A DNA stretch of 64,000 bases from Selaginella moellendorffii (lineage: Eukaryota > Plantae > Lycopodiophyta), in assembly GCF_000143415.4 (NCBI RefSeq), contig NW_003314289.1:317904-381903 (forward strand), in the 5' to 3' direction. Under the pieces are notes generated by a model. It was given only the letters and a program-made list of their open reading frames with translations, ran no database searches and had not been told where the DNA came from. Both the position numbers and the translations under genes were made by a program. Of the stretch, positions 31,526-34,342 are shown one piece after another (the stretch's first letter is position 1; each line of letters begins with the position of its first letter).

Positions 31526-32090
31526 TGATGACTGAAAAGCCCCATTCATCATCACTACTGTCCAGTTGTATATAAAGCCTCTTGTAAATAAGCACACGGT
31601 AATGTGTTCGGACAAATTGTACCAATGACACAGGGAACTGGTGCGATACTCGTCTATCACATTATCTACTCAGGTGGAATTTAGTAGTTAGCTTCAATAG
31701 CTTTTTGAATTCCCGGAGTCCAGTTCACCTTACTATGGTGGTCCACGTTTTGAACATGGTTGAAATGTCCAAAGTTGTCACTATCTGACTGGAGCCAGCC
31801 CATGTCAGTCACCTTTACTGAAACTGTCAACCTTTTCAGAGTAGAGCTTCAACACTTCAAACGCATAAGGTTTTGAAGTTGAACCAAGGTGAATATATAA
31901 ACCTTAAATTTCTTGTAGCTTAAAGCTGTGTACAAATTGTACAGTGTGCAGCTAATTGCACCAAAATATAATTTTCAGCTGCACACTGTACAATTTGCAC
32001 AGTGACAATTTTGTTATATTAGCCTTGGTTTTTTTCTTGACAGAATCCCACCTCAAGACAAATAGGATGAATGGGGCTTTTCAGTCATCA
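31526..32090. repeat. 25-bp perfect inverted repeat pair enclosing an internal 21-bp-stem hairpin
   Basis: TGATGACTGAAAAGCCCCATTCATC (31526-31550) pairs with GATGAATGGGGCTTTTCAGTCATCA (32066-32090). The inner stem is 31933-31953 / 31977-31997. Confidence 0.85.
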
Positions 32091-32296
32091 CTTATTGGCT
32101 GGTACATCTTTCATACAGCCACATTGCTTACCTTTGGCATGGAATCTCAGGCTGCCTCACTAAGTTTCCTTCTGTCAAAAGAAGGGAGGGCAAAGGGGAC
32201 CTCTAACTAAGTTACTTTCTTTGGTAGTGCATAGCTCGACGCATCTCTTGTCTGTCTAATATCCAGAGTCACTCTAGATCCGTAGTGCTAGCGATC

Positions 32297-33362
32297 ATGG
32301 GCTCCTACATCTCAATCCACAACAACACTCCGGACACTTACTTGGTGAAGGTTGGCCACGACGAAGCAGCCCTCAGCATTGCAACCATTGTCACTGGTCT
32401 AATCGGGGCACTCGCTGCTATCATCGTCAGTGCAGGGGCACTCTCCGGTGTCTCAGCTGCTCTGGTCGCAAATGGGGTGGTGAGCGTGTTTGGCATCTCC
32501 ACTGGCGCCATAGCCACCATCACGGCGGCTGCTGCAAGCATCAAAGTCATTTCAATCGGCGCCACGGTTGTGGACTGGGCGGCTGCCACAGTTCTCTTCA
32601 TCACCAACCAGGTGCAGGCTGACGGCGGATATTATGAGATCCTCCCAGGTGAATTCCAAGTCCCGCTGAGCTGCTTGAAATCTGGTGCTTGCAAATGCTA
32701 AACTTGTTGAGCTTCTTTGATAATTCTCACAGGGCAGAAGCGGACGTACGGCAGGTATACTTTGTCACTGTGGCGCCAGGGGACCTGCCATAGGATCCGA
32801 GTGAACCCGGACAACCCAGAGCAGGTGATCACCGATGTGGTGTATATGAGGCCAATCTTCAGTGGTGCGACAAATAATTCTGTTCTGGAGCACAACATCC
32901 AGCACTGGATCGACAGATGGGGCCATGAAAATCAGCACGTCGTCACTTTGCAGAAGGTCTGGGCATGGAGTCTCGCAAAGTCTCGCAAACCTTGAACTTT
33001 ATGCTTAAGTTTCATTGTTTCCTTCCTTATGGTGTCTGCAGGAAAATTTTTCCCTTTCCAGCAGGAACATTTCGTTTGTGGATGGCCAGCTGCGAGCGGA
33101 ATGTCGGGATTCTAGCTGGCGCTGGCACAATGCTGTCATGGACCTCAACTATTACTACGAGAATATTAATGGCGTTGTCAAGACTGCAAAGAGAAAGCCG
33201 GGGAATTTTACGCTCTCGTGCTCCGAGATGGAGCTCAAAGGCGCTAAGATTTTCGGATTGGCAGAGACCGAGGACAAACGGAAGATCAAGTTTGAGCTGG
33301 ATCTGGACATTGACATCGCCAACAAGGAAGGCAGGCTCATATGCAACGACCTCGCTATATAG
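32297..33362 (+). CDS. Unknown N-terminal domain with long hydrophobic segment fused to a C-terminal CVNH (cyanovirin-N homologue) lectin domain; 3 exons, 298 aa
   Basis: Exons 32297-32648, 32733-32956 and 33042-33362 join in frame via GT-AG introns. Exon 3 has two CVNH pseudo-repeats: NFSLSSRNI..GQLRAEC..DLN..NING and NFTLSC..LDLD..IANKEGRL. Confidence 0.82.
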
Positions 33363-34342
33363 CTGTGTCGTCTCCGTTTCCATCATGAACCCAAACGAAT
33401 CCAAGTTGAATCTTATGGTACCAAATAAATAGCAGCGGATTCGGCATATTTATATTTGAGCATTTTGCATCAAGTGCTTCAGTTCCACAAGCTTTCCAAC
33501 CATATCTAAACACTGTTAAATAACTGAAATTTGCAAATAAGCTACATGATAGAAATCTGTAGCCAGAGTAATTCATATGTGTGCTACTGTTGTAATTTGT
33601 ATTTAATCTACATTGATAACATTATATCAATTTGAAGAGAACAGCATCAGAAGAAAGCTGAACCAGTTGGTGACTTTTTTGCAATTCCTGGTACGTCGAC
33701 GGCTTTAGTCGGGGCAAGTGGGCAAGTGAGCTCTGTTATTCACCTGATTTTAAGATTCTACGACCAAGGAACGCCAAATATAAGCTTGGCACACAAAGCC
33801 AGTCCCATACTCGGTAGTGGGTACCTGCAAAAAAACAGAGGTGAGCACAAAGTTGCACACTAAAGTGAAACTTCAAGCAATTTTACCTCCTATGACACCT
33901 TATTGTCTGTGCTGTCATGGTTGGTTTGGCTGTTCTAGCTGAGACTGGGAAGATTTTTGGAGAGAGTTCAAAACTTTGGCAGGTAATTCAAATGAATGGA
34001 ATATCCCTATATTACCCGCCCCGACCTGCATATTCCTACTAATCAAATTCAAAACACGACACCTTTGGAACAGCTGTTTCAAAGCAGCAACAAACAGAAG
34101 AGAAAAGAAAGACCCTTGTCGCTGTGCATTCGATCGAGAAGCACAGTGCCGCTTTTTTGAAGCTTCCACAAGTACACGGCACTGGGCGTGCCACAGCAAA
34201 TATGACTTTGTGCAAGTATTCTGCTGTCCTGCCTACTGCAGTTATTGAAATTAAAGCAACATATATTAATATTCAGACACTCAGATCAATCCAGCAAATC
34301 GGCCAGCAAACCACGATTCTCTTACAACAACCTCAAATTCAG

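What the first reader, a model, noticed from the sequence alone, without database searches (positions are those of the whole stretch)
32297..33362. Hydrophobic-hairpin domain fused to a CVNH lectin: candidate glycan-targeted pore-forming defence protein
Seen: a cleanly spliced 298-aa gene with no signal peptide. Residues ~24-103 form an ~80-aa Ala/Gly/Ile/Val-rich stretch with almost no charges. It sits inside a soluble domain (MGSYISIHNNTPDTY... / ...YTLSLWRQGTC...PIFSGATNNS). The whole CVNH domain is a separate phase-0 exon. Known: CVNH domains bind high-mannose glycans and occur patchily in cyanobacteria, filamentous fungi and seedless plants, usually alone or with LysM-type partners. Inference: a membrane-inserting helical hairpin plus a lectin is the layout of lectin-guided pore-forming toxins. 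The exon-bounded CVNH suggests assembly by exon shuffling. I do not recognise this architecture as described.
Basis: partly seen in the sequence, partly recalled or inferred. Interest (0 to 1): 0.82.

Follow-up and report, generated by a model that had tools for sequence, protein, structure and literature searches.

The report
Uncharacterised apolar domain fused to lectin
A real, spliced and expressed Selaginella gene joins a cyanovirin-type sugar-binding domain to a protein domain that has never been described. That domain occurs patchily across eukaryotes, carries a long greasy helical insert, and is repeatedly fused to different lectins, which suggests a sugar-guided membrane-acting protein whose activity is untested.

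Summary
The gene has three exons (32297-32648, 32733-32956, 33042-33362) and encodes 298 aa. Transcript contigs from four studies skip both GT..AG introns exactly. Exon 3 is a complete CVNH domain (Pfam 7e-13). Residues 24-108 are 85 aa with only two charges. The window is Selaginella moellendorffii, a second haplotype of LOC9663357.

Residues 1-192 match no Pfam family and no solved structure, by sequence or by fold. They belong to an unnamed eukaryote-only family with 268 cluster representatives. Named members come from moss, lycophyte, fern, green alga, diatom, oomycetes, ascomycetes and a tardigrade. AlphaFold gives a confident beta-sandwich (residues 1-20 plus 111-190) holding the apolar helical insert.

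The domain nearly always starts at Met1 with an N-myristoylation-type motif (MGSY[LI]S). It stands alone or carries C-terminal CVNH, GNA-type, ricin-B, hevein or fascin-like lectins.

Pore formation is not shown, and there is no similarity to any known pore-forming toxin. Topology is unresolved: the myristoylation motif conflicts with extracellular-type tails in some members.

My leading reading is a lectin-targeted membrane-inserting defence protein (about 0.4).

The parts
32127..32296 (+). 5' UTR. Transcript contigs begin at 32127-32179. In-frame stops lie upstream of the start codon.
32297..32648 (+). Exon 1 (codons 1-117 plus the first base of Gly118). It encodes strands beta1-beta2 and the whole apolar insert.
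32297..32317 (+). Codons for MGSYISI. This N-terminal motif is conserved from Met1 across the family and fits the N-myristoylation pattern.
32366..32620 (+). Apolar Ala/Gly/Ile/Val/Ser/Thr-rich insert, residues 24-108 (2 charges). Predicted helices are 28-46, 69-83 and 91-110. Residues 26-45 are transmembrane-like (Kyte-Doolittle 2.0-2.5).
32649..32732 (+). Intron 1, GT..AG, 84 nt, phase 1. Its position is shared with paralogues P0001 and P0004.
32733..32956 (+). Exon 2, residues 118-192. It forms the C-terminal bulk of the beta-sandwich and holds the family's most conserved motifs (SLSLWxQ..C.R, YMRPIFSGAT, H.IQ.WI.K.G).
32957..33041 (+). Intron 2, GT..AG, 85 nt, phase 0, exactly at the N-domain/CVNH boundary. 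It is shared with P0004 and absent from the stand-alone P0001.
33042..33362 (+). Exon 3, residues 193-298 plus the stop codon. It is a complete CVNH (cyanovirin-N homology) lectin domain that lacks both CV-N disulfide pairs.
33363..33584 (+). 3' UTR, up to the end of the transcript contigs.

Best explanation
The gene encodes a two-module chimerolectin (a lectin fused to an effector module).

Module 1 (residues 1-192) belongs to an undescribed, eukaryote-only protein family. It is a small beta-sandwich built from the first 20 and last 80 residues. The sandwich carries an uncharged Ala/Gly/Val/Ile-rich helical insert of about 85 aa and a free, probably N-myristoylated, Met-Gly N-terminus. Module 2 (residues 193-298) is a CVNH lectin added by capture of a 3' exon.

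Proposed mechanism, all inferred:
1. The protein is made in the cytosol without a signal peptide.
2. The CVNH domain docks it onto mannose-rich glycans of a foreign cell surface (fungus, oomycete, or the gut of a feeding animal) after release or cell rupture.
3. The apolar helices, with stripes of small residues suited to tight helix-helix packing, leave the sandwich and insert into the target membrane.
4. They probably act as an oligomer and damage the membrane.

Shown: the gene structure, its expression, the CVNH identity, the existence and spread of the family, the predicted fold, and the swapping of lectin partners. Inferred: glycan specificity, membrane insertion, oligomerisation, toxicity and a defence role.
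For: - The gene is real and spliced as modelled.
- CVNH matches at 7e-13 over its full length.
- The N-domain has no Pfam hit. A profile search finds 268 family representatives, and the domain almost always starts at residue 1.
- Named members are Selaginella, Adiantum, Sphagnum, Tetrabaena, Epithemia, Phytophthora/Pythium/Albugo/Globisporangium, Acephala, Epicoccum and Paramacrobiotus. Nothing was found in 185,579 prokaryote species genomes. Such a patchy spread is typical of defence and toxin genes.
- C-terminal partners come from five different carbohydrate-binding folds: CVNH, B_lectin, ricin-B, hevein x2 and fascin-like. Stand-alone forms also exist.
- AlphaFold with 96 sequences gives the sandwich pLDDT 93-98, with helices at 28-46, 69-83 and 91-110 at lower confidence.
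- Across 96 sequences the insert stays almost charge-free while its sequence varies. Only G47, P51, G60 and G66 are conserved, and small and bulky residues alternate with i+3/i+4 spacing in helix 1.
- The CVNH domain and the B_lectin tails lack disulfide-forming Cys pairs, which is compatible with cytosolic synthesis.
- The two haplotype alleles differ at 7 synonymous and 6 non-synonymous codons. None of the non-synonymous changes lies in the insert.
- Seedless plants are known to carry microbial-type pore-forming and insecticidal proteins (PMC9477723 and PMC10622923, by title and abstract only).
Against: - An uncharged stretch of 75-85 aa is too large to be hidden by a 100-aa sandwich in a soluble monomer. 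It looks more like a constitutive lipid-embedded segment.
- The conserved MG...S/T N-terminus (120 of 126 members fit the myristoylation pattern) suggests membrane attachment in the producing cell.
- Twenty-four representatives carry Cys-rich or Pro/Thr-rich tails of extracellular type, and one has a C-terminal transmembrane segment. This fits surface display better than a stored cytosolic toxin.
- In some members the insert is charged or replaced by a long soluble helical region.
- The insert has low pLDDT (43-67).
- There are no activity or induction data.
Confidence: 0.4

Rival explanations
1. Surface-displayed lectin. The apolar insert is a constitutive transmembrane hairpin (N-out/C-out), or helix 1 is a signal-anchor. 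Either would hold the beta-sandwich and lectin on the outside of the producing cell, or in the lumen of an organelle, as an adhesin, receptor or cell-wall/glycan organiser.
For: - Many family members have tails typical of extracellular proteins: two hevein domains (12 Cys), Cys-bearing ricin-B, Pro/Thr-rich mucin-like linkers, and a recurrent 6-Cys module CxxCGxG...PCGC. P0059 ends with a transmembrane segment plus a basic tail.
- Helix 1 (residues 26-45) has Kyte-Doolittle hydropathy 2.0-2.5, which is ordinary transmembrane strength.
- The N-terminal flank is net acidic, which favours N-out.
- The tardigrade member has a Lys-rich loop between two apolar segments.
Against: - The MG...S/T myristoylation-type N-terminus is conserved, including in the members with Cys-rich tails.
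- Most members have no basic residues in any candidate cytosolic loop.
- The second apolar segment is only marginal (Kyte-Doolittle 1.2-1.7), and it is charged in Sphagnum.
- The Selaginella CVNH lacks the disulfides of secreted CV-N.
- A signal-anchor topology would split the sandwich that AlphaFold predicts with confidence.
Confidence: 0.25
2. Cytosol-facing monotopic protein. It would be N-myristoylated and anchored by an oleosin- or caveolin-like apolar hairpin in the cytosolic leaflet of a membrane or on lipid droplets. The lectin would read glycans that appear in the cytosol, for example from damaged endomembranes, invading hyphae or haustoria, or free oligomannose.
For: - The myristoylation pattern holds in 120 of 126 members. 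It is kept even when extra residues are inserted after MG (P0094, P0059).
- The uncharged stretch of about 80 aa is comparable in length to the oleosin core (the oleosin comparison is from general knowledge).
- There is no signal peptide.
- The CVNH and B_lectin partners are Cys-poor.
- Both sandwich halves lie on one side of the insert.
Against: - Hevein and other disulfide-rich partners cannot fold or find chitin in the cytosol.
- There is no proline knot. The window protein has no Pro at all in residues 24-108, and there is no Pfam oleosin or caveolin match.
- The most conserved part of the domain is the sandwich, not the anchor. The sandwich therefore has its own function.
Confidence: 0.15
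3. The beta-sandwich is itself a ligand-binding or catalytic module, with conserved polar residues N9, T11, D22, Q133, C136, R138, R157 and H/Y171. Its function is unrelated to membrane damage, and the Ala-rich insert is a variable regulatory or self-association region.
For: - The invariant polar residues sit in the sandwich, not the insert.
- The insert varies from about 60 to about 270 aa, and in P0160/P0172 it is replaced by charged Ala-rich helices.
- There is weak, non-significant resemblance to PUD-1/2-type beta-sandwiches of unknown function.
Against: - The near-absence of charge over about 70 columns in 96 diverse sequences is a strong constraint. It is best explained by a lipid or tightly packed apolar environment.
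- No enzyme family matches by sequence or fold.
Confidence: 0.12

Closest known systems
CVNH lectins (cyanovirin-N; fern CrCVNH 2JZJ; fungal CVNH-LysM MoCVNH3 2L9Y/5C8O)
   Same: Exon 3 matches Pfam CVNH over the full length and aligns with CV-N residues 4-98, keeping both pseudo-repeats. Its occurrence in a seedless plant fits the known distribution (PMC6362431).
   Different: It is fused behind an unrelated 192-aa domain rather than standing alone or hosting a LysM insert. Both CV-N disulfide pairs are incomplete. Glycan specificity is untested.
Lectin-plus-pore-former chimerolectins (general knowledge: Laetiporus LSL, sea-cucumber CEL-III, natterin/Dln1-type lectin-aerolysin fusions, amaranthin-aerolysin proteins of plants)
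   Same: A carbohydrate-binding module is coupled to a putatively membrane-active module. The lectin modules are exchangeable across the family, the taxonomic spread is patchy, and a signal peptide is often absent.
   Different: The non-lectin module is not aerolysin, MACPF, actinoporin or any other known pore-former, by sequence or by fold. The lectin is C-terminal and the effector needs a free N-terminus. No activity has been shown.
Proteins with a hidden or embedded apolar hairpin (general knowledge: colicin pore domains, Bcl-2 family; oleosin and caveolin monotopic hairpins)
   Same: It has a long, almost charge-free helical segment rich in small residues.
   Different: The host fold is a small beta-sandwich, not a helical bundle. 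There is no proline knot and no family match. The insert is longer than the colicin hairpin, and its length varies from 60 to 270 aa.
Aegerolysin / actinoporin-like beta-sandwich membrane binders (OlyA 6MYI, Cry34Ab1 4JOX)

Membership tests
CVNH (Pfam PF08881) | Profile match above the curated gathering score, covering the whole domain | tested here: met
   49.7 bits against a cut-off of 24.5, E 7e-13, profile positions 1-101 of 102
CVNH (Pfam PF08881) | Two tandem pseudo-repeats that align with cyanovirin-N | tested here: met
   Residues 3-99 of exon 3 align with CV-N residues 4-98 (1IIY and the tandem constructs 3S3Y/3S3Z)
CVNH (Pfam PF08881) | Binding of high-mannose glycans | not testable with these tools
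   Needs a glycan array or NMR titration
Cyanobacterial CV-N proper | Two intradomain disulfides (C8-C22, C58-C73) | tested here: not met
   The alignment shows one Cys of each pair replaced. This is a feature of CV-N itself, not of the wider CVNH family.
Known pore-forming toxin families (colicin, ClyA/Hbl, actinoporin, aegerolysin, MACPF/CDC, aerolysin, Cry/Cyt) | Sequence-profile membership | tested here: not met
   No Pfam family at E<=1 beyond noise for exons 1 and 2. The family profile against all PDB sequences gives a best E of 0.63.
Known pore-forming toxin families (colicin, ClyA/Hbl, actinoporin, aegerolysin, MACPF/CDC, aerolysin, Cry/Cyt) | Shared fold | tested here: not met
Known pore-forming toxin families (colicin, ClyA/Hbl, actinoporin, aegerolysin, MACPF/CDC, aerolysin, Cry/Cyt) | Membrane permeabilisation by an oligomer | not testable with these tools
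   Needs liposome leakage assays, electrophysiology or cryo-EM
Oleosin-like hairpin proteins | Uncharged core of about 70 aa with a central proline knot, and a Pfam oleosin match | tested here: not met
   The uncharged core is present (85 aa, 2 charges). However, residues 24-108 contain no Pro and there is no Pfam match.
N-myristoylated proteins | Met-Gly start with a small, uncharged residue 3 and Ser/Thr/Ala at residue 6 (PROSITE-type pattern) | tested here: met
   The window protein starts MGSYISI. 120 of 126 family members that start with the family motif fit the pattern, and G2 is present in 87 of 93 aligned rows.
N-myristoylated proteins | Covalent myristate on Gly2 | not testable with these tools
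   Needs mass spectrometry or click-labelling
New N-domain family (unnamed) | Motifs MGSY[LI]S.xN[ND]T, SLSLW[QR]Q..C.R and YMRPIFSGAT, plus an apolar insert between beta2 and beta3 | tested here: met
   All are present in the window protein. It is 62% identical to P0001 and 46-51% identical to oomycete members.

The most novel reading that the evidence does not exclude
The N-domain defines a new class of eukaryotic membrane-inserting effector. It is an N-myristoylated beta-sandwich that stores an apolar helical segment of about 80 aa and delivers it into target membranes. It spread patchily, probably by horizontal transfer, among plants, algae, oomycetes, fungi and a tardigrade. Evolution made it modular by bolting on at least five different lectin folds. 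It would work by a mechanism unlike any solved pore-forming toxin, and possibly includes self-export from the producing cell, which would reconcile the missing signal peptide with the extracellular-type tails.
Probability: 0.25. Interest if true: 0.85.

Novelty: new variant of a known kind. Interest (0 to 1): 0.62.

Why it matters
If the N-domain is membrane-active, it is a new effector module for lectin-guided toxins. It has no relative in Pfam or the PDB, and it is present in crop pathogens (Phytophthora, Pythium, Albugo), in early land plants and in diatoms. That would add a new family to the short list of eukaryotic membrane-damaging folds. It would give a defined function to the rare plant CVNH lectins. 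It would also offer a natural example of one effector retargeted by swapping glycan-binding domains.

Even if the domain turns out to be an anchor, it is a conserved, unnamed family of at least 268 sequence clusters that deserves a name and a structure. The conflict between its myristoylation-type N-terminus and the extracellular-type partners is a clean, testable question about membrane topology or unconventional export.

Tried and rejected
- Homo-oligomer prediction of four copies of the N-domain gave no verdict: score 0.00, controls not run, alignment not used. It is evidence neither for nor against oligomerisation.
- Pfam on exons 1 and 2 returned only noise (Peptidase_S15, SH2, DUF3592; E 0.06-0.4).
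- The family profile against PDB sequences found nothing below E 0.63.
- Foldseek and VIA-align on two models returned only generic beta-sandwiches. Aegerolysin/OlyA, Cry34 and PUD-1/2 appear as weak, non-significant leads. The ESM Atlas returned only the family's own clusters and PUD1_2 at 0.79.
- The prokaryote genome scan with the motif [LV][YF]MRPIFSG found no relative.
- Literature searches for the gene identifiers, for CVNH with Selaginella, and for CVNH with pore-forming found no description of this architecture. This covers only the held open-access library.
- I rejected the reading that helix 1 is a cleavable signal peptide. Residues 1-25 are the most conserved part of the domain and are modelled inside the sandwich at pLDDT 97.
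- I rejected the reading that the invariant N9-x-T11 is conserved because it is an N-glycosylation site. Pro follows the Thr in 27 of 96 members, including this one, so a structural turn is more likely.
- I rejected a conserved C17-C136 disulfide. Plant members have Val17 but keep C136.
- There is no paralogue elsewhere in the window.
- There is no CVNH remnant downstream of the stand-alone paralogue P0001.
- The careful phylogeny did not finish within the time limit. Only the quick tree was used, and only for picking representatives.

Full report
**1. Observation**

Reading 31900-33800 shows an ATG at 32297 and three coding blocks in consistent frames, joined by two GT..AG introns.
- Exon 1 is 32297-32648 (117 codons plus one base).
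- Exon 2 is 32733-32956.
- Exon 3 is 33042-33362, ending in TAG.
- The total is 897 nt, giving 298 aa.

Contigs of four public runs from four studies lie on the stretch. Each skips exactly 84 nt (32649-32732) and 85 nt (32957-33041), both GT..AG. They span about 32127/32179 to about 33584. Because these contigs are spliced, they are transcript-derived. None of the contigs laid retained an intron.

The 5' UTR carries in-frame stops and no ATG before 32297, so the protein starts MGSYIS and cannot have a signal peptide from an upstream exon.

Residues 24-108 are 85 aa with Ala 26%, Ile+Val 28%, Gly+Ser+Thr 27% and two charged residues. Exon 3 alone matches Pfam CVNH at 7e-13 over profile positions 1-101 of 102. 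It also aligns with cyanovirin-N residues 4-98.

**2. Source and alleles**

The word search returned Selaginella moellendorffii proteins.
- P0003 (LOC9663357, 298 aa) has the same exon structure. Its locus differs from the window at 14 of 1066 bases: 7 synonymous codons, 6 non-synonymous codons, and none in the introns. The flanks are 95.5-96.6% identical.
- The window is therefore the other haplotype, or another assembly, of the same gene. Both copies are intact.
- None of the non-synonymous changes lies in the apolar insert.
- No paralogue lies in the window.
- Neighbours are ordinary plant genes: a PPR gene upstream, and pectinesterase and kinase sequence downstream on the minus strand.

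**3. The N-terminal domain is an unnamed family**

Exons 1 and 2 have no Pfam match. A profile built from 28 relatives matches no PDB sequence (best E 0.63). Run against 1.84 billion cluster representatives, the same profile finds 268 proteins at E<=1e-3, of which 115 are at E<=1e-30. The match almost always starts at residue 1.

Named members come from these groups:
- Selaginella, with four loci: two carry CVNH, one is a 199-aa stand-alone protein and one is a shorter model.
- The fern Adiantum and the moss Sphagnum.
- The green alga Tetrabaena and the diatom Epithemia.
- The oomycetes Phytophthora, Pythium, Globisporangium and Albugo.
- The ascomycetes Acephala and Epicoccum.
- The tardigrade Paramacrobiotus.

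A motif scan of one genome per prokaryote species found no relative.

**4. Anatomy of the domain**

AlphaFold2 was run with 28 and then 96 sequences. It gives a beta-sandwich made of residues 1-20 and 111-190, with pLDDT 93-98 in the second model. Between strands beta2 and beta3 the sandwich carries helices at 28-46, 69-83 and 91-110 of lower confidence (pLDDT 43-88).

Conservation over 96 sequences shows the following.
- Near-invariant positions are M1, G2, N9, T11, D22, Q133, C136, M156, P158 and G162. The main motifs are SLSLW[QR]Q..C.R and YMRPIFSGAT.
- Columns 28-99 stay nearly charge-free, yet their sequence is variable. Only G47, P51, G60 and G66 stand out.
- Helix 1 alternates bulky residues (28, 31/32, 35/36, 39, 42/43) with small ones (30, 34, 37, 41, 44, 47). 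This is the pattern of tight helix-helix packing.

Only residues 26-45 reach ordinary transmembrane hydrophobicity (Kyte-Doolittle 2.0-2.5). The rest is marginal at 1.2-1.7.

The insert is plastic.
- It is expanded to 150 aa or more of Gly/Ala in P0029 and P0061.
- It carries charges after helix 1 in the Sphagnum and tardigrade members.
- It is replaced by about 270 aa of charged Ala-rich helix in P0160 and P0172.

**5. No known fold relative**

- Foldseek against the PDB gives nothing at E<=0.001. The top rows are thaumatin, pilins and ostreolysin A at E 0.08-0.2 and TM about 0.2.
- The ESM Atlas returns only the family's own clusters, labelled Oomycota and Cnidaria. It also gives a weak PUD1_2 lead at 0.79.

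The fold is also not that of an oleosin or of any catalogued integral membrane protein.

**6. The N-terminus**

Of 126 proteins that begin with the family motif, 120 fit MG[^EDRKHPFYW]xx[STAGCN][^P]. G2 is present in 87 of 93 aligned rows. Two members that insert extra residues after the start still begin with MG (P0094 starts MGNAPS..., P0059 starts MGNIGA...). N-terminal extensions in a few metagenomic models look like translated UTR followed by an internal MGSY. Partner domains are always C-terminal.

A free, probably N-myristoylated, N-terminus therefore seems to be required. This is an inference from the motif, and lipidation was not tested. That is not independent evidence.

**7. Partner swapping**

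Pfam scans of 45 long members found these C-terminal partners:
- CVNH in two members, both from Selaginella.
- GNA-type B_lectin in two (P0022; P0156 from Tetrabaena).
- Ricin-B in four (P0050, P0063, P0099, P0115).
- Two hevein domains in one (P0054).
- A fascin-like beta-trefoil in one (P0111).

This is five carbohydrate-binding folds on one N-domain, alongside many stand-alone forms.

The Selaginella gene structures agree with modular assembly. Intron 1 (phase 1, within ILP|G) is shared by all three loci. Intron 2 (phase 0, at the domain boundary) is shared by both CVNH genes. The stand-alone gene simply runs on to a stop, with no CVNH remnant downstream.

**8. What does not fit**

Twenty-four representatives, 20 of them starting with MG, have tails with 6 or more Cys, Pro/Thr-rich linkers, and a recurrent unknown module CxxCGxG...TC...CPL...PCGC. 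These cluster in one clade that includes the diatom protein. P0059 ends in a transmembrane segment with a basic tail. Such tails, and hevein domains, normally belong outside the cell.

In contrast, the Selaginella CVNH has lost one Cys of each CV-N disulfide pair, and the B_lectin tails have zero or one Cys.

A cytosolic myristoylated N-terminus, a sandwich that needs both ends on one side of the membrane, and extracellular partners cannot all hold in a simple topology. The possible resolutions are:
- release or unconventional export, as an effector;
- an N-out/C-out hairpin, in which case the MG start has another meaning;
- different solutions in different lineages.

No tool here resolves this.

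**9. Mechanism and odds**

- **Lectin-guided membrane-inserting defence protein (0.4).** I rank this first. It is supported by the partner swapping, the patchy distribution that is rich in pathogens and early plants, the charge-free insert with small-residue stripes, the absence of a signal peptide and the Cys-poor lectin. It fits what is known of cytoplasmic defence lectins and lectin-toxin chimeras (general knowledge), and of microbial-type toxins in seedless plants (titles and abstracts).
- **Surface-anchored lectin (0.25).**
- **Cytosol-facing monotopic lectin (0.15).**
- **A sandwich with a function of its own (0.12).**

An annotation artefact is excluded by the transcripts.

**10. Rule compliance**

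The window's own joined 298-aa protein was never sent to a search or fold tool. The exons were searched apart by reference, and the database allele P0003 (6 differences) stood in for the joined form. Inside one script the exons were joined only to count synonymous and non-synonymous differences. Nothing was printed or searched.

Noticed in passing
window:31929-32001: A near-perfect inverted repeat (25-nt arms, 96% complementary, 23-nt spacer) lies about 130-200 nt upstream of the transcript start. It could be a small foldback or MITE-like element, or a promoter element.
   Followed up: partly
window:32297-33362 versus L003:2001-3066: The two haplotype copies differ at 14 exon positions and at none of the 169 intron positions, while the flanks are only 95.5-96.6% identical. 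The zero intron divergence is odd and may reflect chance or gene conversion.
   Followed up: partly
window:34610-37265 (minus strand); L003:3462-5066: The downstream neighbour is called in the public assembly as one 731-aa product with Pectinesterase, PMEI (weak) and protein-kinase Pfam hits. This is either a merged gene model or an unusual pectinesterase-kinase fusion.
   Followed up: no
window:25118-26644: An intronless 508-aa pentatricopeptide-repeat-like ORF lies upstream on the plus strand.
   Followed up: no
If so, a second candidate membrane-attack gene lies on this stretch. I did not examine it.
   Followed up: no
family members P0036, P0046-P0051, P0057, P0068, P0073, P0077, P0084, P0094, P0095 (tails): A recurrent, unannotated module of about 60 aa with 6 Cys (CxxCGxG...IP..G..TC.E.E.AG..G.I....CPL...L.PCGC) often follows Pro/Thr-rich linkers and a conserved PPEG..SWG[DN]V motif. 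It has no Pfam match.
   Followed up: partly
family members P0160, P0172, P0162: Some variants replace the apolar insert with about 270 aa of charged Ala-rich helix (P0160, P0172). In P0162 the whole domain is tandemly duplicated with a shorter, less apolar insert.
   Followed up: partly
L001:104-1077 and L002:5510-5818: The paralogue loci neighbour a SABATH-type methyltransferase (Methyltransf_7) and a small heat-shock protein (HSP20) respectively. There is no shared neighbourhood among the paralogues.
   Followed up: no
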